Below are positions 1 to 29,759 of a stretch of DNA of 64,000 nucleotides, piece after piece. This DNA comes from Dendrobates tinctorius (taxonomy: Eukaryota), in assembly GCF_039654945.1 (NCBI RefSeq), contig NW_027361848.1:1-64000 (forward strand), read 5' to 3'. The notes below the pieces were generated by a model. That model was given only the letters and a program-made list of their open reading frames with translations, made no database searches and was not told the DNA's origin. Both the position numbers and the translations under genes were made by a program. How positions within the stretch are numbered: position 1 is the first letter of the stretch; every line of letters begins with the position of its first letter.

Positions 1-61
1 AAGAGAGAGAGATAGAAGAGAGAGAGATAGAAGAGAGAGAGATAGAAGAGAGAGAGATAGA

Positions 62-94
<33 letters not shown>

Positions 95-317
95 TAGAAG
101 AGAGNNNNNNNNNNNNNNNNNNNNNNNNNNNNNNNNNNNNNNNNNNNNNNNNNNNNNNNNNNNNNNNNNNNNNNNNNNNNNNNNNNNNNNNNNNNNNNNN
201 NNNNNNNNNNNNNNNNNNNNNNNNNNNNNNNNNNNNNNNNNNNNNNNNNNNNNNNNNNNNNNNNNNNNNNNATAGAAGAGAGAGAGAGAGATAGAAGAGA
301 GAGAGAGAGAGAGAGAT

Positions 318-353
<36 letters not shown>

Positions 354-790
354 AGAGAGAGAGAGAGATAGAAGAGAGAGAGAGATAGAAGGAAGAAGAG
401 AGATAGAGGAGAAGAGAGAGATAGAAGGAAGAAAGAGAGAGATAGAAGGAAGAAAGAGAGAGATAGAAGGAAGAAGAGAGAGATAGAAGGAAGAAAGAGA
501 GAGATAGAAGGAAGAAAGAGAGAGATAGATGGAAGAAAGAGAGATAGAGAAGAGGAGAGATAGAGAAGAGATAGATAGAGAAGAGAGAGATAGAGAAGAG
601 AGAGATAGAGAAGAGAGAGATAGAGAAGAGAGAGATAGAGAAGAGAGAGATAGAGAAGAGAGAGATAGAGAAGAGAGAGATAGAGAAGAGAGAGATAGAG
701 AAGAGAGAGATAGAGAAGAGAGAGATAGAGAAGAGAGAGATAGAGAATGAGAGAGATAGAGGAAGAGAAAGAGAGAAGAGAGAGAGAGAG
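1..790. repeat. Purine-rich (AG)n/GATA simple repeat, including a 15-bp unit array (AGAGAAGAGAGAGAT) at about 576-745
   Basis: Directly visible; interrupted by an N run. Confidence 0.95.
105..271. other. Assembly gap (N run)
   Basis: 167 N bases. Confidence 1.
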
Positions 791-792
791 AG

Positions 793-937
793 GGCCCATC
801 CGTCAAGATCCGCCGGTAATGCAACTCAATGGGGAAAAAAAAAAATAGATCCGCAAAACAAAATGGCGGATCCGTTTTTTTTGCAAAACTGCGGATTTTG
901 ACTGATGGTCACAAACGGAAGTGTGAAACAGGCCTTA
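793..937. mobile_element. Right-end fragment of a PIF/Harbinger-like MITE
   Basis: Ends in ggaagtgtgaaacaggcc-tta, with the same terminus and ggatccg/aaaaaa internal motifs as the complete copies at 40611 and 55324. Confidence 0.55.
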
Positions 938-1769
938 GTTACCAAATTGTAAAATTCACATACCAGCAAAACACTAGGTCAATTCCAATAATAAAGTCAC
1001 TCTGTGTGGGTTGGTTCTACTGTTTTGGCACTTCAAGGACATGGCGCCTGCAAACAACTCCATCAAATTATGCGCTCAAAAACGTCAGTCCTTCCTTTTG
1101 GAGCTCAGCAGTGAGCCTAAACAGTAGTTTTCCAGCACATATAGGGAACCTTGTACTCAGAAGGAATGGCACAGCAAATTTCGGGGTCCATTTTATCCTG
1201 TTACCCCTGTTAAAAATTTGGGGCTAAAAACAGTTTTGTGGGAAAATGTGATTTTCATGGCTCAACGTGAGAATTCCATCAAGCACCTGGGTGTTCAAGG
1301 TGCTCATAACACATCTAGATAATTTCTTGAGGGATCTAGTTTCCATTCGTCCATTTCCATTCTAGTTTCCAGAATTAGGTCATTTGTGGGGGGTTCCACT
1401 ATTTAGACACATCAGGGGCTCTGCAAACGCGACATGGCGTCCTTTATTTATTCCAGCCAATTTTGTGCTTCAAAAGTCAAACGTTGCTCCTTGCTTTCTA
1501 AGCCCTGACATGTACTTAAATATAAAATACTCCACCAACAAAACCACATGGTATTTAGTCAACTGACCACTATTAGATAATATATGGACCTCATGTGAAT
1601 TATTAGACAAATATGGACACTTCAAACATACCGCATAACCAGTTACCAAAGGAAACAATGATGTACTAGTCCACATAAAGATAGAAAGCAATGAATCTTT
1701 ATTATGGATAAATTATTAAAATTGACAGATTGATAATGGAAAAAGGGAATTGTATAAAATGACAAGCTA

Positions 1770-2097
1770 CTATATTTTTCAGATTATAAGACGCACCCCA
1801 AATTTTGAGGAGAAAGGTAGAAAACAAAAACACACTTTTTTTTAATAAAATGGCAGTGCTTCTTATACTCCATGCGTATCATTGCTTCCCAGGGGTGGTG
1901 GCTGTGGTTAAGTGGGGTCCCAGGGTCGTTGCTGGAAGAGGCAAGAGTAGTGTAGCGGCAGCCCAGGGGACAGAGTGCAGCGGCAGCACCGGACACCAAC
2001 AGCATCGATTAGGTATATCTGCATTATAAGATGCACCCCCATTATCCCCCCAAATTTTGGGGGGAAAAGTGCGTCTTTTAATCCAAAAAATACGGTA
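1770..2097. mobile_element. Short Tc1/pogo-like MITE
   Basis: Terminal inverted motifs tatttttcagattataagacgcac and gtgcgtcttttaatccaaaaaatacggta. Confidence 0.55.
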
Positions 2098-2224
2098 ACT
2101 GCATAAATGCTGAACCATAACACCAGCCTCTTATTTATAAATGCCTAAGCAGTCAATGATAGTTACCTAGATGTACTTGTGCAGAGTGGGCAGCTCCTGG
2201 TGAGGGTCAGGATGGGAGTGTGTG

Positions 2225-2269
2225 CCAGCCCCAACGAACGTTTCGGCCCTGCCTTCATCAGGGGGCTGG
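2225..2269 (-). ncRNA. Type I hammerhead ribozyme (minimal, PLE/retrozyme type)
   Basis: Minus-strand RNA reads CCAGCCCC-CUGAUGA-A-GGC-AGG-GCC-GAAA-C-GUUC-GU-U-GGGGCUGG. This gives an 8-bp stem I, an intact core, stem II, a short stem III and a GUU cleavage triplet. Confidence 0.8.
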
Positions 2270-4862
2270 TGTTATGGTCCACTATATGCCGGGGGATCTT
2301 GTTTAGCATTCGGATGTACTGTGCGCTTCTAAATTTTTGCATTATTGATGGTGCCTTTATTGATTAATAATTTGGTGATATTATACATATTGCTTACTGT
2401 CTAGGGTGGTCATGTGGGGTGTGTGCTCCCCATTTTTGTAACAGCATTTATGGACAATTAGCTTGTCATTTTATACAATTCCCTTTTCCCGTTATCTGTG
2501 TCAATTTTAATATTTATTACTAGAAAACATTGAATCTTTATCTTTATTTGAATTAGCACATCATTATTTCCTTTGATAACTGGTTATGCATGTACTTTAA
2601 TAGTAGTTTTCCACCACATACGGGGTATCTGCATACTCAGGAAAATTTGCTCAACAAATTGTATGGTCCATTTTCTCCAGTTACCTTTGTAAAAATGCTA
2701 AATTATGGGATAAAGCAACTATTTCGTGAGGAAAAGTAAAACGTTAATTTTTTTCCACATTGCTTTAATTCCTGTGTAGCACCTCAAAGGTTAATAATCC
2801 TCTTGAATGTGGTTTTGAGTGGGTGCAGTTTTTAGAATGGTGTCACTTTTGGGTATTTTCTGTCATAAAGGTCCCTCAAAGTCACTTAAAATGTGATGTG
2901 GTCCCTAAAAATATTGCTTTTGTAAATTTTGTTGGAAAAGTGAGAAATTGCTGATATTTTTTTTGTTAGGAAGTTAAAAGTTTGTTTAAAAAATTATGTA
3001 ATTATGTAAAGTAGACTTGTGGTAAATATTATTTATTAACTATTTTGTGTAACTTTATGACAAAAATTAGAGAATTGGAAAGTTGGAAAATTTACGGCAA
3101 ATTTCAGATATTTTCACAAACAAAAAATATCAACCTAAATTTACCACTAACAAAGTACGATGCGTCACAAAAAAAGCAAAAACTCAGAACCACTGGGATA
3201 CATTGAAGCCTTCTAGCATTATTACCACAAAGTGACGCTGATCAGAATTGTAAAACCTGGCCTAGTCAGGAAGGTGAAAACAGGCTGGGTGGTGAAGTGG
3301 TTAAACGTTTAATAGTTCTATCCATTGAGCAATGGCTGTAATGTAACAGCAATAATCATTCTGACTTACCTGTGATGAATCAATACTCCAGCATGACATG
3401 GCTGTTATCTCTGACTCATTTTATTGGGAAGGTGGGAGCGCTAGAAACTCAGTAAGCATAACTTAAAAGATTCACATCCGCTTAATGTTATCCAATCCCC
3501 TTTACCGCTAGTGACCTGGTAGTTTTCAGCACGGGTCATGATCACTTTAACATGAGATGCTGTCTGATCATAAATTTCCTACACGGTCTCCCAAGTGGTG
3601 CAGGACAGACCTGGTCTGGTATTATGACCAGGTCATGGCCTAGTAGGGGACAATTAGGGAAGACACTACATAGGTAAATTAAACTCTGTATATTAGGATT
3701 TAAGCCATTGGCTGAATTGTTGGCTTTTGCAGTCTCACACTAGATGCTTTTAAGCCAAACTGGTCAATAAAGGGGTTCTATCTAAAAGTAATGTCTAAGG
3801 GGGCCCCAGAGAAATGATTGGTCGAATGTATCAGCACTGCCAAAAGATTTGATGAGCTGCCATCAGAAAGGTTTGGCGAATGATCTCTCGGAGAACTCAG
3901 GAGTGGCTCGGCTGAATGAGTGCTCCTGTGTATAGAAGAATAGGCAATATAGTATTGCTTATAGCCAATCAGCTGCACGCCATCTAAGGACTATGGTGGG
4001 ATTGTTTATCTATCCACAGGATATCCAACACCTTCACCATCTGCAGTCAGCCTCAGGATCAAGCCCGATTTCCTCTGAAGAAGCCCCCTATATCATCCAT
4101 ACTGAGGTATTGTGCACCATCACTGAGAGCTAAAGCTCAGCACAAGTGCATTGAACAGTGAGTTAATCCCTGAACAGGGACAATAGAGGAGCTAGTCACA
4201 GGTTAAGCTTGTATAAACAAACGTTATCATTGATTACAGTCACTACATAATTCAGGAATAATCTATATTTTCTATAAAGTATGAGAGGCAAACACCCTGC
4301 AAATAGGATAAAAGCCAAACCAGACATTATGGGCTCATGCAGACGTCAGTTCATCTCTGTATGATCACGGACCACAATGAATACATGGACTGGCTGAGGG
4401 TCTCCCAGCCAGAACATAACAGCTTCATATATATCAATGAGGCTGTCATGCATTGTGGTCTGTGATCCTACAGAGATGCACCAAGTCTGCATAAACTCCA
4501 AGTCATGAGCAAGGCTCCTTAACCGCTCGATAATGACTTTTAGAATTGGTACTTCTAATAGTTAGCACTAAAGTTCAATGCCTCTTCTCTTCCGTACAGG
4601 CAATGTGTATATTTAATTTCCCAGAGTGGTATTGCATGGCCTAGAGATCTCTTTACCCCAGCATGTCCCGCTCTACACTGACAGAAGTTACCCCTTACAT
4701 CCTCATCAGAGGCCTCTCATCCAGTCAAATTCGACCTCTTGCTTTGCTCTGGTAAGGGGCAAACAAGACAAAACACCTGTCTGCAAATATGATCAAAAAA
4801 AGTCAAACCAGACACTCCAAGCCATGTGGAAAAGCTCACTAAATTGTCAGTACTGACCTTTA

Positions 4863-5129
<267 letters not shown>

Positions 5130-6104
5130 TCATTCATTTCTGTACAAGGCAATTGTTTTACTGACAGTGTTAACATTTCATCACAGGAAGGGAATCTGTC
5201 AGTTGGATCAATCCTCCTAAGCCATCCATATGAGCATGCAGGTCAGAGAAAGTGGATGGGTGACAGTACAGCTGAGTTGCACTTTGTCTCATTACAAACA
5301 CTTCCATCAGATCTCTCATAGTGATGGCAGCTGCCCCCACAATGGCTGCGGTGATGGTGTGTTAGTAATCACACTTCGCTCTACTCTGCTCCAGGCACTA
5401 TACGATAACACATAGTTCTACAATGAGACCAATCGTATTATAAACCTACAGAGAATGCAGTTCAGATGCACTTAAATGAGAAAATACATTTGTTATTAGA
5501 ACAACAACCTTATTAAAATGAAAAACACAGAATTTTAAAAGTAGAAACACAATGGGAAAAAAGACATGGCAGAGATGATAAATACAGGCAATACAGTACA
5601 ATGTGATAAACGGTGGCAATAATTTACAGGAATGGGACATAAATACACAATGATGTAATTGCAAAATGTGATTCAAAAGGAACCTGCGACCAGAAACAAT
5701 GCTATTAACCTGAAGATATGGTGTTAATCTGCAGGTTAATAGCGTTATTATGCCGTCCGGCGTCTGCACGCAGCTGAAGGCAGCGGGGAGAAAATGAACT
5801 TTATTCTCCCTGACAGCATTCAGTTTTCAAATATCAAAAAAAACTGACCATCATTTCCAAACAGAAATCAGGTGTGAACAGGTGCTTACTAACAGTAGTC
5901 ATCTCCATAAACAACTAAGAAATAAAGTAGCATTCTATAGTGCTATAGCACAAGGCAATTCTTGTTGCTGGAACCTGCCTAATGTCAATCATCTCTTTAG
6001 GCTGAAGCCTACATTTATATGGGAAGGCAAGATCCTGCATTTAAAAACTCCTGAGGCTAAAGGGTGGTGTGCTCAGTCATAGAGCCTATGTATACAAATA
6101 TTAA

Positions 6105-7322: not shown

Positions 7323-7924
7323 CTAAAAGACTGACCGTTCCTTACAAACAAAAAACAGGTGTGTACAAATGCTTACTAAGAGTAGCGATCTCCATATATA
7401 ACCAACAAATAAATTAGCATTATGTAGCACTAGAGCGTGCAAACGTGAAATATATGAAATTTGAATTGCATTACCCGCAGCCATGATAAGGCGATTTTTG
7501 TTGCTGGGAACCTGCCTAATATGAATGCTCTCTTACGCTGAAGCCTACATTTATATGGGAAAGCAGGATCCTGCAATTAAAAACTCCTAACGCTGAGGGG
7601 TGGAGTGCTCAGTCAGAGTTAATGTATACAAATATCAAAAGACTGACTTTCACTTACAAGCAGAAAACAGGTGCTTACTAAGAGTAGTGATCTCCATACA
7701 GTGGGGAAAAAAAAAGTATTTAGTAAGCCACTAACTGTGCAAGTTCTCCCACTTAAAAAGATGAGAGAGGCCTGTAATTGACATCATAGGTACTGTAGAT
7801 CATAACTATGAGAGTCAAAATGAGAAAACAAGTCCAGAAAATCACCTTGTCTGATTTGGCAAGATTTCACAAATTATGGTGCAAAATAAGTATTTGGTCA
7901 TTAACAAAAGTTCATCTCAATATT

Positions 7925-27070: not shown

Positions 27071-27686
27071 GATGAACACATGCTGCACTTCACTGGTTTC
27101 ATGAACACATCCCAGCACCTCTGTTAGCACAAGCGAGTATATTGGAAATAGTGGTGCCATCAGCAAACATTCTATCTTCACTTATACTATTATACTATTT
27201 TTTTCTACCCTCAGGGCAGTGATTCCTGTATAAACAATTTTTAGCTGTATAATCCAACAGGAGTTGACACAGAGCCTTTTTTTCCCCACCAGCTGCATCT
27301 GAGATTTTTTGCCCTACTTTCCCTGGGTGGTTAGCAACAGTGTTATCAGTCTGTTTAAATTTTCATTTTTTGTGTTTTTTTGTGTTCTCTCCCCTCTTTC
27401 CAAGAGCCGTAACTTTATTTTTCACCTGACTTGGCTTTTTGAGGGCTTGTTTTTGAGCAACGAGCTGTACTTTCGAACAACACCATTCATTTTACGAAAT
27501 AATTTACTGAAAAATGAGAAAAAATCCAAATGCAACAAAATAAAAAAAAAAATGTTGGAATTGTTTATTTTTACAGGGAAGATGTATATCTTTGTACCGT
27601 GTTAGCCAGTAGATAGAAAAATATTCAGGATTGAGAGTCCTCAGTAGTTGATACCTTTTAATGGCTAACTGAAAAGATGGTAACAC

Positions 27687-27730
27687 ATTGCAAGCTTTCG
27701 AGACTACTCAGGTCTCTTCATCAGGCTAGA
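27687..27730 (-). ncRNA. Mirror copy of the PLE hammerhead (host sense strand)
   Basis: Reverse complement of 28852-28895. Confidence 0.75.
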
Positions 27731-28313
27731 CTAATACAAAATCTGAAGAGTCACATATTTATGCACAATACAGCCTAGAAAAATGCAATAGATAAGCCAA
27801 GTGACGTGAAGCAGAACTATCAATATGGGAGAGGGAGAAACATAAATATAAACATTGGACCAGTTCATAGATAAGGAGTCCGGATGTTTTATGGTCCTCT
27901 GATTGGGGTCTAGTTCTATGTTGTGATGCCCCCACACGGTTTTAAAAGGAAATTCCTTAATTGATGTAAAAAGACATAAATCCATGCGACACATTCATTC
28001 CAGCACTGAGAGTGTCAAAGTTCGTCATAAATTTGTACTCCCAAACTCGTCTCTCTCTCTGAGAATTGAAGTTACCTTTCAATACCAGTAATTTCATATC
28101 CACGCTGCTGTGATCAGGGATACAGAAATGTTTTGCCACAGGTAGATCCATTCTTTTTTCTCTTATTGTGTGACGATGAGCATTCATCCTTGTTCTAAGC
28201 TTTTGCCCTGTCTCCCCCACATACATACCCCCAGTTGGACATTTAGTACAAATAATTAAGTACACCACATTAGATGTAATGCAGCTGAAAGTACCTGCTG
28301 CATTACATCTAAT

Positions 28314-28625
28314 GTGGTGTACTTAATTATTTGTACTAAATGTCCAACTGGGGGTATGTATGTGGGGGAGACAGGGCAAAAGCTTAGAACAAGGATGAAT
28401 GCTCATCGTCACACAATAAGAGAAAAAAGAATGGATCTACCTGTGGCAAAACATTTCTGTATCCCTGATCACAGCAGCGTGGATATGAAATTACTGGTAT
28501 TGAAAGGTAACTTCAATTCTCAGAGAGAGAGACGAGTTTGGGAGTACAAATTTATGACGAACTTTGACACTCTCAGTGCTGGAATGAATGTGTCGCATGG
28601 ATTTATGTCTTTTTACATCAATTAA
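28314..28625 (+). pseudogene. PLE GIY-YIG endonuclease C-terminal domain (mirror copy at 27957-28268, minus strand)
   Basis: VYLIICTKC..MYVGETGQKLRTRMNAH..PVAKHF..H..RERRVWE..GMN: GIY-YIG with a CCHH motif. No upstream RT is present. Confidence 0.88.
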
Positions 28626-28851
28626 GGAATTTCCTTTTAAAACCGTGTGGGGGCATCACAACATAGAACTAGACCCCAATCAGAGGACCATAAAACATCC
28701 GGACTCCTTATCTATGAACTGGTCCAATGTTTATATTTATGTTTCTCCCTCTCCCATATTGATAGTTCTGCTTCACGTCACTTGGCTTATCTATTGCATT
28801 TTTCTAGGCTGTATTGTGCATAAATATGTGACTCTTCAGATTTTGTATTAG

Positions 28852-28895
28852 TCTAGCCTGATGAAGAGACCTGAGTAGTCTCGAAAGCTTGCAAT
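28852..28895 (+). ncRNA. Minimal type I hammerhead ribozyme of the PLE terminal repeat
   Basis: GC-CUGAUGA-A-GAGAC-cugagua-GUCUC-GAAA-GCUU-GC. Intact core, 5-bp stem II and palindromic stem III (AAGCUU). Confidence 0.75.
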
Positions 28896-29759
28896 GTGTT
28901 ACCATCTTTTCAGTTAGCCATTAAAAGGTATCAACTACTGAGGACTCTCAATCCTGAATATTTTTTTATTTTTACAGTGTTCATTGTATGGTAAAAATAA
29001 CCTGGCGACAGCATTTTCCAGGTCAGGATGAATATGCAGATGCCAAACTTGCTTTTTTCTAAGTTGTGCTACAGAGAATAAAAAAAAAGTGGAAATTTTG
29101 AAAAAGAAAAATAAAGTTTGTCCTCATGTCTGAGATTCACGGACAGAGCTGGGTAATGACACATGTCTTACATGGTGAGAAGATGTTTTTATTAATACCA
29201 ATTTGTGATAAATACAATGTTTTGATCTAATTTTATTCTTCACAGAGTTTATAGTACGGATTTGATAAATCAAACTTTACAGGCAAGGCAAAAATGAAAT
29301 AAGCCCTTTTATTTTTTATAGGTCCATTATTTCTTGCAGGGATGGTAGGAGGGAGAAGCGATTCACATTTTTGCATTTATTTTTTTTAGTCTCAATAGAG
29401 AACTTGAACCTGCTGTTGTATTACATTATATAGAGAAGGATGACGGTTGGGCTTCATAGGAGGTCAAGCATGGCAGCCAATTGAGTCTTCACTATCCCTA
29501 TGGCAGAAATGACAACCCATCGCACCCTGCAATTACGTCATTTAAATACTGCTGACAGTGAAGTGTAAATGAATCAACTGCAGTGATCTGAGCAAGCTCC
29601 GGTCGCTGATGTTACAGGCAGACGCCGGCTGTGTAACGTAATCAGTATTTGCCTAGTATGATGTGGGCTCAGCTACTGAGCCAACTCTATACAGGACCTG
29701 AAGTAGGATATACTATTGAATCCAATAGCAGAAAGGGGTTAATAAACCTGGAGACTTAC

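What the first reader, a model, noticed from the sequence alone, without database searches (positions are those of the whole stretch)
2225..2269. Well-formed hammerhead ribozyme in the sense strand of a GALNT2 intron
Seen: the minus strand reads CCAGCCCC CUGAUGA A GGC agg GCC GAAA C guuc GU U GGGGCUGG, with every catalytic core base, a perfect 8-bp stem I and an NUH (GUU) site. The surrounding element is old, since its inverted arms are heavily diverged. Known: minimal type I hammerheads occur in Penelope-like elements and retrozymes, and some intronic hammerheads have been retained in vertebrates. Inference: this copy is transcribed in GALNT2 pre-mRNA about 2.7 kb downstream of the 122-bp exon. 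No antisense partner was seen, so it could cleave the intron co-transcriptionally.
Basis: partly seen in the sequence, partly recalled or inferred. Interest (0 to 1): 0.7.

Follow-up and report, generated by a model that had tools for sequence, protein, structure and literature searches.

The report
Worn solo hammerhead in frog intron
The hammerhead self-cutting RNA motif is really there, on the sense strand of a frog GALNT2 intron, but it is a single worn leftover of an old jumping element that is predicted to misfold, so it is most likely an ordinary passenger and not a working RNA cutter.

Summary
Observation confirmed. The minus strand 2269->2225 holds a complete type I hammerhead: all core bases, an 8-bp helix I, a 3-bp helix II after one unpaired A, a 2-bp helix III with a tetraloop, and a GUU cut site between 2233 and 2232. 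It is the only complete motif in the window; 300 shuffles gave none. It lies 2.7 kb downstream of a 122-bp GALNT2 exon, on the gene's strand.

It is a relic.
- It sits in a 1,066-bp ORF-less insertion (1523-2588) with a 14-bp target duplication and an inverted 5' arm, the same form as a young Penelope-like insertion in this window.
- Two later insertions hit the element: a 94-nt piece that splits an ancestral 19-bp helix I, and a high-copy MITE.
- The hammerhead segment is near single-copy in genome contigs at >=80% likeness.
- A sister taxon has it, about as diverged as the flanks (p=0.39).
- Rfam's Hammerhead_1 scores 20.4 bits against a threshold of 34.
- The ribozyme fold is 5.3 kcal/mol (local) to 14.2 kcal/mol (200-nt context) worse than competing folds.
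- No partner copy for dimer action is seen.

Published amphibian hammerheads need dimers, and 8 of 9 Xenopus dimer elements did not cut. The scan has noted similar solo intronic hammerheads in this genome before (QDPR and IPP introns). Cleavage itself is untested.

The parts
2225..2269 (-). Complete type I hammerhead motif. Helix I 2269-2262/2232-2225; CUGAUGA 2261-2255; unpaired A 2254; helix II 2253-2251/2247-2245; GAAA 2244-2241; helix III with tetraloop 2241-2234; U17 at 2233. Predicted cut between 2233 and 2232.
   Evidence: Rfam RF00163 gives 20.4 bits over the full model at 2267->2227.
2262..2280 (-). 5' strand of an ancestral 19-bp helix I. Only its last 8 nt pair with the proximal partner today.
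   Evidence: 19 of 20 positions pair with 2130->2111. The MFE fold of 2295->2100 uses this long-range helix.
2112..2130 (-). Displaced distal 3' strand of the ancestral helix I. It begins with GAGGCTGG, a copy of the proximal GGGGCTGG. It now competes with the proximal strand.
2131..2224 (-). 94-nt nested insertion ending in an A-rich tail. It is flanked by an 8-nt duplication (2232-2225 and 2130-2123, 7 of 8 identical) and splits helix I.
   Evidence: sequences of the duplication and the insert. In one search, 4-5 paralogous contigs differ at 2209, 2210 and 2213.
1771..2100 (.). Nested high-copy MITE with terminal inverted repeats of about 26-32 nt and an internal palindrome at 2020-2085.
   Evidence: arms 1765-1796 and 2069-2100. 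(summed contig depth 1e3-5e4, against 4.5 for single copy)..
2459..2588 (-). Inverted 5' arm of the carrier insertion, the reverse complement of 1633-1769.
   Evidence: Identity is 82.5%.
1523..1769 (-). Direct arm (1769->1633) plus 3' tail (1632->1523) of the carrier element. It is low-copy in the genome. A paralogous contig spans arm and tail together.
   Evidence: depth 20-160; record 25 covers 1520-1673..
1523..2588 (-). The whole composite, ORF-less insertion that carries the hammerhead. It sits inside an extremely abundant repeat.
   Evidence: joints 1477-1481 -> 2602 show that other copies of the host repeat lack this stretch; no ORF above 79 aa.
2589..2602 (.). Target-site duplication, right copy (14 nt).
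   Evidence: 13 of 14 identical to 1509-1522. A 12-mer with at most 1 mismatch occurs in 2.9% of shuffles.
1509..1522 (.). Target-site duplication, left copy (14 nt).
4947..5068 (-). 122-bp GALNT2 exon upstream of the motif. It fixes the gene's strand.
   Evidence: 73 bits to human GalNAc-T2 residues 204-243..

Best explanation
This is a solo, decayed type I hammerhead inherited from an old non-coding retroelement of the Penelope-like / animal-retrozyme kind.

In the parent element (inferred from published families), the ribozyme cut multimeric transcripts into unit RNAs. It probably did so as a dimer through its short, nearly palindromic helix III.

What the sequence shows:
- The carrier was pasted into an abundant repeat in a GALNT2 intron by target-primed reverse transcription, leaving a 14-bp target duplication and an inverted 5' arm.
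- A 94-nt insertion later split the original 19-bp helix I. Its 8-nt target duplication happens to keep 8 pairs next to the core.
- A MITE then landed 100 nt downstream.

What follows by inference:
- Today the motif is transcribed as part of GALNT2 pre-mRNA.
- It is predicted to fold into a rod that hides the core, and then into a long-range helix with the displaced strand.
- It has no tertiary contacts and no partner.
- It therefore cuts very slowly or not at all and is removed with the intron as a neutral passenger.
For: Motif:
- It is complete and non-random.
- Its best Rfam family is Hammerhead_1 over the full model, though below threshold.

Carrier:
- 14-nt target duplication, 13 of 14 identical.
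- Inverted 5' arm.
- No ORF.
- The confirmed young Penelope-like foldback in the same window has a 13-nt exact duplication and inverted arms.

Age:
- The arms are 82.5% identical.
- There are two nested insertions.
- The hammerhead segment is at about 1-3x single-copy depth at >=80% likeness.
- It is present in organism B at 97.7% identity, against 96-96.4% for the flanks (Fisher p=0.39).

Inactivity:
- The hammerhead fold is -16.0 kcal/mol against an MFE of -21.3.
- That is +5.3 kcal/mol locally and +14.2 kcal/mol in context.

Literature:
- Amphibian hammerheads are weak as monomers (PMC7229834).
- Minimal Penelope-type hammerheads have low activity even as dimers.
- 8 of 9 Xenopus dimer elements gave no cleavage at 6 mM Mg, and 44% of Xenopus retrozyme copies overlap introns (preprint 10.64898/2026.07.22.740005).
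Against: - No other copy of the parent family could be recovered, so descent from a Penelope-like or retrozyme family rests on architecture, not on homology.
- There is no similarity to the Penelope-like copy in the window.
- Helix II (3 bp) and helix I (8 bp, ancestrally 19 bp) differ from published minimal Penelope-type hammerheads, which have a long helix II and a short helix I.
- Nearest-neighbour folding ignores the tertiary energy of the ribozyme and co-transcriptional order. The proximal helix I strand is made about 100 nt before its competitor.
- No RNA data were available, so the lack of cleavage is inferred, not shown.
Confidence: 0.77

Rival explanations
1. One reading: a retained, active intronic ribozyme that cuts GALNT2 pre-mRNA co-transcriptionally, 2.7 kb after the 122-bp exon, and so affects processing of the transcript.
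For: - All core bases, the sense orientation and the 8-bp helix I are intact.
- Helix III has 2 bp plus a tetraloop, so a monomer fold is conceivable. The published axolotl HHR_Amex2 has this form and cuts weakly as a monomer.
- The proximal helix I strand is transcribed before the competing distal strand.
- The motif is kept in a sister taxon.
- Conserved intronic hammerheads exist in amniotes (PMC6155905).
Against: - The ribozyme fold is disfavoured by 5.3-14.2 kcal/mol.
- There are no loop-loop contacts, helix II has 3 bp with a triloop, and the Rfam score is 20.4 bits against a threshold of 34.
- Divergence from organism B is not lower than in the flanks (p=0.39).
- 8 of 9 intact Xenopus dimer elements do not cut.
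- A slow intronic hammerhead does not disturb splicing.
- The 8-bp helix I is partly a by-product of a target-site duplication.
Confidence: 0.07
2. The hammerhead does not belong to the TSD-flanked carrier. The arms plus tail are one low-copy element, possibly a foldback DNA element. The 264-nt inner piece with the hammerhead is a separate, older or later fragment of a different ribozyme-bearing repeat.
For: - Depth differs between the parts. The left arm is at 18-36x single copy, and the hammerhead segment at about 1-3x.
- A second, weaker possible duplication (7 nt, 6 of 7 identical) lies flush with the arms at 1619-1625 and 2594-2600 (read).
- The inverted arm lacks the 110-nt tail.
Against: - No target duplication is seen at the inner junctions (2458/2459 and about 2101/1770).
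- The 14-nt duplication (13 of 14) is much stronger than the 7-nt one.
- Earlier notes on this genome describe hammerhead units with a Penelope-style inverted 5' end and 13-14-bp duplications. These notes are unchecked leads.
Confidence: 0.13
3. A chance match: unrelated sequence that happens to satisfy the hammerhead descriptor.
For: - With a relaxed descriptor, 0.18-4.4 chance matches per Gb are expected, so a multi-Gb frog genome could hold a few.
- No family copies were found.
Against: - The per-window expectation is 1e-5 to 3e-4, and 300 shuffles gave no match.
- Features outside the descriptor also fit: the G10.1-C11.1 pair, the extra nucleotide after A9, the GAAAC-G..C-GU helix III of the Rfam type I consensus, and a 19-bp ancestral helix I.
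- Frog genomes hold thousands of true hammerhead copies (about 9,000 minimal motifs in X. tropicalis), so true relics far outnumber chance matches.
Confidence: 0.03

Closest known systems
Minimal hammerheads of Penelope-like elements (Cervera & de la Pena 2014, PMC4209133)
   Same: - Type I topology.
- An unpaired nucleotide between A9 and G10.1, and a G10.1-C11.1 pair.
- A very short helix III with a nearly palindromic sequence (ACGUUCGU; AACGUU in the other register).
- No loop-loop contacts.
- Mostly found as solo, diverged copies; abundant in frogs.
- The carrier has a long target duplication and an inverted 5' arm, like the Penelope-like insertion at 27.6-29.0 kb of this window.
   Different: - Helix II has 3 bp instead of 6-8.
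- Helix I has 8 bp (ancestrally 19) instead of 4-5.
- No RT or GIY-YIG ORF lies nearby.
- There is no sequence similarity to the Penelope-like copy in this window.
- Rfam's type I model aligns to this motif but not to that copy.
Animal non-LTR retrozymes with classical type I hammerheads (PMC7229834; preprint 10.64898/2026.07.22.740005; Rfam RF00163)
   Same: - A non-coding carrier a few hundred nt long, with a target duplication longer than 4 bp.
- A GAAAC-G..C-GU helix III of 2 bp plus a tetraloop, as in axolotl HHR_Amex2.
- Monomer copies are common in Xenopus introns.
- Best Rfam hit over the full model length.
   Different: - A single hammerhead, with no head-to-tail repeat.
- No internal loop in helix I and no loop 2 for tertiary contacts.
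- 20.4 bits, below the gathering score of 34.
- No abundant family at >=80% likeness.
Conserved intronic hammerheads of amniotes (RECK / HH9, CTCL / HH10; de la Pena & Garcia-Robles 2010, as reviewed in PMC6155905)
   Same: A type I hammerhead on the sense strand of an intron of a protein-coding gene, thought to derive from retroelement hammerheads.
   Different: - Those are conserved across birds and mammals and keep their tertiary contacts.
- This one shows no excess conservation, lacks the contacts, and sits in a decaying transposon nest.

Membership tests
Hammerhead ribozyme, type I (Rfam RF00163) | Conserved core: C3 U4 G5 A6 N7 G8 A9, G12 A13 A14, an A15.1-U16.1 pair, and H17 not G. | tested here: met
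   every core base is present and U17 is at 2233.
Hammerhead ribozyme, type I (Rfam RF00163) | Three helices around the core, open at helix I. | tested here: met
   Helix I has 8 bp, helix II 3 bp (after one unpaired A), and helix III 2 bp plus a tetraloop.
Hammerhead ribozyme, type I (Rfam RF00163) | Score at or above Rfam's gathering threshold. | tested here: not met
   No hit at gathering. 20.4 bits against 34 when 66 nt are searched alone.
Hammerhead ribozyme, type I (Rfam RF00163) | Tertiary contacts between the loop or bulge of helix I and loop 2, needed for fast cleavage at physiological Mg2+. | tested here: not met
   Helix I is a continuous 8-bp (ancestrally 19-bp) duplex with no internal loop. 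Loop 2 is a 3-nt AGG.
Hammerhead ribozyme, type I (Rfam RF00163) | Self-cleavage at the predicted site. | not testable with these tools
   No RNA run was available. Predicted folding disfavours the active fold by 5.3-14.2 kcal/mol.
Penelope-like element minimal hammerhead | [quoted passage not shown] | tested here: met
   A2254, and G2253 paired with C2245. Criteria from PMC4209133.
Penelope-like element minimal hammerhead | Palindromic positions 15.2-16.2 / loop 3, allowing a dimeric helix III. | tested here: inconclusive
   ACGUUCGU would give 6 pairs with two U-U mismatches in a dimer. AACGUU is a perfect palindrome only in a register that breaks helix I. CGTT is tandemly repeated at 2240-2233.
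Penelope-like element minimal hammerhead | Location in the terminal repeat of an element that encodes RT and GIY-YIG. | tested here: not met
   No ORF above 79 aa in 1523-2588. No similarity to the Penelope-like copy at 27.6-29.0 kb. Most published copies are solo too.
Animal non-LTR retrozyme | Head-to-tail repeats of a 150-970-bp unit, each with a type I hammerhead. | tested here: not met
   One hammerhead only, and no direct repeat of the unit.
Animal non-LTR retrozyme | Non-coding, inserted with a target duplication longer than 4 bp. | tested here: met
   14-nt duplication, 13 of 14 identical. No ORF.
Animal non-LTR retrozyme | Membership of a repeated family, shown by homologous copies elsewhere in the genome. 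| tested here: not met
   The segment 2108-2527 is at about 1-3x single-copy depth at >=80% likeness in contigs of three taxa. More diverged copies cannot be excluded.
Domesticated intronic hammerhead (HH9 / HH10 kind) | Conservation above that of the flanking intron across species. | tested here: inconclusive
   Organism B shows 5 differences in 213 nt, against 25 in 657 nt of flank (p=0.39). The positions of the differences are not visible. The more distant organism D is not resolved at the motif.

The most novel reading that the evidence does not exclude
The 4-nt repeat CGUU-CGUU (or a point change in a palindromic loop) gave this solo copy a self-contained 2-bp helix III with a tetraloop. 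The 8-nt target duplication preserved helix I. A once dimer-dependent retroelement ribozyme therefore became a weak monomeric cutter, kept in the GALNT2 intron of several frog species. It would act in the few seconds before the competing distal strand is transcribed.
Probability: 0.04. Interest if true: 0.55.

Novelty: new member of a known kind. Interest (0 to 1): 0.14.

Why it matters
As it stands, it matters little. Solo hammerhead relics of Penelope-like elements and retrozymes are already known to be numerous in frog genomes and common in introns. This copy shows no sign of selection or of a stable active fold.

Its modest value is as a worked example:
- It shows how such a motif decays. 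Helix I is split by a nested insertion whose target duplication still mimics a perfect stem.
- It shows why a perfect-looking core is not evidence of activity.
- It shows that Rfam's hammerhead models miss the minimal Penelope-type ribozymes altogether.

Had it been an active intronic cutter kept by selection, it would have been a non-amniote counterpart of the conserved RECK and CTCL intronic hammerheads.

Tried and rejected
- Rfam at gathering and at E<=10 on 301 nt gave no hammerhead. Only the 66-nt search did. The filters, not the score, explain the earlier blanks.
- Self-BLAST of 1600-2620, and a more sensitive BLAST of the inner segment and the left part against the rest of the window, found no other copy and no link to the Penelope-like foldback.
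- The search for extended similarity between the two halves of the element found only the roughly 137-nt arms. There is therefore no hidden antisense hammerhead.
- One metagenome pattern scan for the core plus helix II gave six unrelated contigs and no frog family member.
- Earlier-findings look-ups by sequence and by relatives were blank.
- Supplementary files of PMC4209133 are not held, so the published Xenopus minimal-hammerhead families could not be compared.
- The look-up of sequencing runs found no RNA holder. All runs are contigs, so no RNA ends, strand or expression could be read. The positions of the five A-versus-B differences were not listed.
- A first simulation for the chance rate timed out and was replaced by a factorised one.
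- I considered reading the motif in the minimal register (GAAA-CG-UU, then a 4-nt bulge). I rejected it as the active register because it breaks the 1.1-2.1 pair.
The N run 105-271 was left alone.

Full report
**1. The observation**

Read on the minus strand, window:2225-2269:- is a complete type I hammerhead.
- Helix I: 2269-2262 pairs with 2232-2225 through eight Watson-Crick pairs.
- The CUGAUGA box is 2261-2255, followed by one unpaired A at 2254.
- Helix II is GGC/GCC (2253-2251 with 2247-2245) around a 3-nt loop.
- GAAA is 2244-2241.
- Helix III is A2241-U2234 plus C2240-G2235 around GUUC.

A loose core pattern occurs 3 times in the window against 0.29 expected. My full descriptor (core boxes, three stems, UH site) finds only this motif on either strand and none in 300 dinucleotide shuffles. 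A factorised estimate gives 1e-5 to 3e-4 chance matches per window. That corresponds to 0.18 per Gb with helix I of 8 or more Watson-Crick pairs, and 4.4 per Gb if G-U pairs are allowed. The motif is real and is not a chance match at the scale of this window.

**2. Gene context**

The 122-bp exon is 5068->4947 on the minus strand, with AG and GT at its borders. Its 40 residues match human GalNAc-T2 residues 204-243 at 73 bits, against 48 bits for the next paralogue. Two further GALNT2-like exon pieces lie upstream on the same strand, near 53.5 kb and 29.8 kb. No downstream exon motif was found in 1-4946. The hammerhead is therefore on the sense strand of the intron that follows this exon, 2,678 nt after it.

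**3. Rfam**

- The whole window at gathering thresholds gives nothing.
- A 301-nt search at E<=10 also shows no hammerhead.
- A search of 66 nt alone gives Hammerhead_1 (RF00163) over the full model (1-45) at 2267->2227. The score is 20.4 bits against a gathering score of 34, with E=0.0036 for that small search.
- The alignment fits the type I consensus for the core and for the GAAAC-G..C-GU helix III. It loses score in helix II.
- As a control, the unquestionable young Penelope-like hammerhead at 28858 of this window gets no Rfam hammerhead hit at all.

Rfam blanks therefore say little about minimal hammerheads. The GALNT2 motif is in fact closer to the classical type I model than that copy is.

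**4. The carrier**

The motif lies in a nest of transposons.

*Host repeat.* The stretches 1268-1519 and 2612-3283 belong to an extremely abundant repeat, with summed contig depth of 1e4-1e6 against 4.5 for single copy. Joints in other copies link about 1480 directly to 2602. Everything between is therefore an insertion.

*Target duplication.* The insertion is 1523-2588, bounded by a 14-nt direct repeat at 1509-1522 and 2589-2602, 13 of 14 identical. A 12-mer with at most one mismatch appears in 2.9% of shuffles of the flanks.

*Layout of the insertion on the minus strand:*
- an inverted arm (2588->2459), the reverse complement of 1633-1769 at 82.5% identity;
- an inner segment (2458->2101) with the hammerhead;
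- a nested MITE (about 2100->1771), with terminal inverted repeats at 1765-1796 and 2069-2100 and depth 1e3-5e4;
- the direct arm (1769->1633);
- a 110-nt tail (1632->1523).

It has no ORF above 79 aa.

*Comparison with a confirmed Penelope-like insertion.* The young foldback at 27613-28969 of the same window has 673-nt arms that are 100% complementary. It carries the 3' end of a GIY-YIG-type coding region plus a minimal hammerhead. It is flanked by an exact 13-nt duplication at 27564-27576 and 28965-28977. A long target duplication plus a head-to-head 5' inversion is thus the local signature of Penelope-type insertion, and the old carrier shares it. Earlier, unchecked notes on this genome describe the same form for hammerhead units.

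**5. A split helix I**

The 5' strand of helix I continues upstream. The stretch 2280-2262 pairs at 19 of 20 positions with 2130->2111. That distal strand starts with GAGGCTGG, a copy of the proximal GGGGCTGG (2232-2225). The 94 nt between them (2224->2131) end in an A-rich tail. The simplest reading is a small retro-insertion with an 8-nt target duplication into an ancestral 19-bp helix I. The 'perfect 8-bp stem I' is thus partly a by-product of that duplication. A few paralogous contigs match inside the 94 nt (variants at 2209, 2210 and 2213).

**6. Helix III**

The letters CGTT occur twice in tandem (2240-2233). There are two possible origins:
- A minimal GAAA-CG-UU ribozyme (ACGU palindrome, dimer-only) gained a 4-nt duplication.
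- A classical GAAAC-GNNC-GU helix III lost its palindrome by a point change.

Without family copies I cannot tell which. As it is, a dimeric helix III would have six pairs and two U-U mismatches.

**7. Folding**

- The 45-nt hammerhead secondary structure is worth -16.0 kcal/mol.
- The MFE is -21.3 kcal/mol, with core bases GAUGAA paired to UUCGUU. The exact hammerhead structure has a Boltzmann weight of about 6e-5.
- In 100 nt of context the penalty for enforcing the ribozyme is +5.3 kcal/mol.
- In 200-460 nt it is +14.2 kcal/mol, because the long-range helix 2281-2264 with 2128-2111 wins.

These models ignore tertiary energy and transcription order. The proximal strand is made about 100 nt before the competitor. 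But the motif has no internal loop in helix I and only a triloop on a 3-bp helix II, so the contacts that make natural hammerheads fast at physiological Mg2+ are absent.

**8. Copy number and conservation**

All runs offered were contigs, and none is on record as RNA. Findings at >=80% likeness:

| Stretch | Depth relative to single copy |
|---|---|
| 2108-2191 | 2x |
| 2192-2275 | 11x |
| 2276-2359 | 1x |
| 2360-2527 | 3x |

There is thus no abundant family at that level.
- Organism B has orthologous contigs. One covers 2111-2323 with 5 differences (97.7% identity). The flanks 2306-2628 and 3267-3600 show 13 and 12 differences (96-96.4%). Fisher p=0.39, so there is no excess conservation.
- Organism D is about 90% alike in the flank. 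It has single contigs over 2400-2453, so the insertion probably predates that split. The motif itself is not resolved there.

**9. Literature**

[quoted passage not shown] There are about 9,000 in X. tropicalis, mostly solo. They have low activity in vitro even as dimers (PMC4209133).
- Amphibian retrozyme hammerheads cut weakly as monomers and need dimers (PMC7229834).
- In Xenopus, 44% of retrozyme copies overlap introns. Eight of nine dimer elements gave no cleavage at 6 mM Mg (preprint 10.64898/2026.07.22.740005).
- Introns cut by a hammerhead are still spliced. Only fast ribozymes abort splicing (PMC2995048, citing Dye 2006 and Bentley's group).
- Conserved intronic hammerheads are known in amniotes (PMC6155905).

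**10. Verdict**

The functional inference does not.

The best explanation (0.77) is a solo, decayed hammerhead of an old Penelope-like / retrozyme-type insertion, transcribed within the intron but misfolded, partnerless and effectively inert.

Rivals:
- an active co-transcriptional cutter (0.07);
- a hammerhead fragment unrelated to the TSD-flanked carrier (0.13);
- chance (0.03).

The scan has met the same situation on other DNA of this genome (solo hammerheads in QDPR and IPP introns). I did not check those notes.

This is a new member of a known kind, and interest is low.

Noticed in passing
window 27564-28977: A young Penelope-like foldback. Its arms, 27613-28285 and 28297-28969, are 100% complementary with 11 nt between them. 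Each arm carries the end of a GIY-YIG-type ORF and a minimal hammerhead (CUGAUGA, unpaired A, 5-bp helix II, GAAA-GC-UU with an AAGCUU palindrome). An exact 13-nt target duplication lies at 27564-27576 and 28965-28977, about 35 extra nt outside the left arm. Rfam gives no hammerhead hit for it. It lies in a GALNT2 intron too.
   Followed up: partly
window 1771-2100: A high-copy MITE with terminal inverted repeats of about 26-32 nt (1765-1796 and 2069-2100) and an inner palindrome at 2020-2085. Summed contig depth is 1e3-5e4 in three frog taxa.
   Followed up: partly
window 1120-1519 and 2603-3300: Two direct copies (74-81% alike, 1,480 nt apart) of an extremely abundant repeat. Depth reaches about 1e6 in genome contigs, and it is present in all four runs laid. 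The second copy is the target of the hammerhead-bearing insertion.
   Followed up: partly
window 1-790: A long GA-rich microsatellite of 15-nt-type units (AGAGAGAGATAGAGA and the like), interrupted by the N run at 105-271.
   Followed up: no
window 4349-4481: An inverted repeat with 34-nt arms (88% complementary) 65 nt apart, about 470 nt downstream of the 122-bp exon in the same intron. It is probably a small MITE or hairpin.
   Followed up: no
window 5838-6104 and 7325-7638: A dispersed direct duplication of about 270-310 nt (79-90% identity, about 1,487-1,537 nt apart) in the intron upstream of the 122-bp exon. A third partial copy lies at 7637-7718.
   Followed up: no
L001:18-75: A metagenome contig found by the core pattern. 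It looks like a genuine type III hammerhead: a closed helix I hairpin, then CUGAUGA, a short helix II, and GAAAC-GUC. It is unrelated to the frog motif.
   Followed up: no
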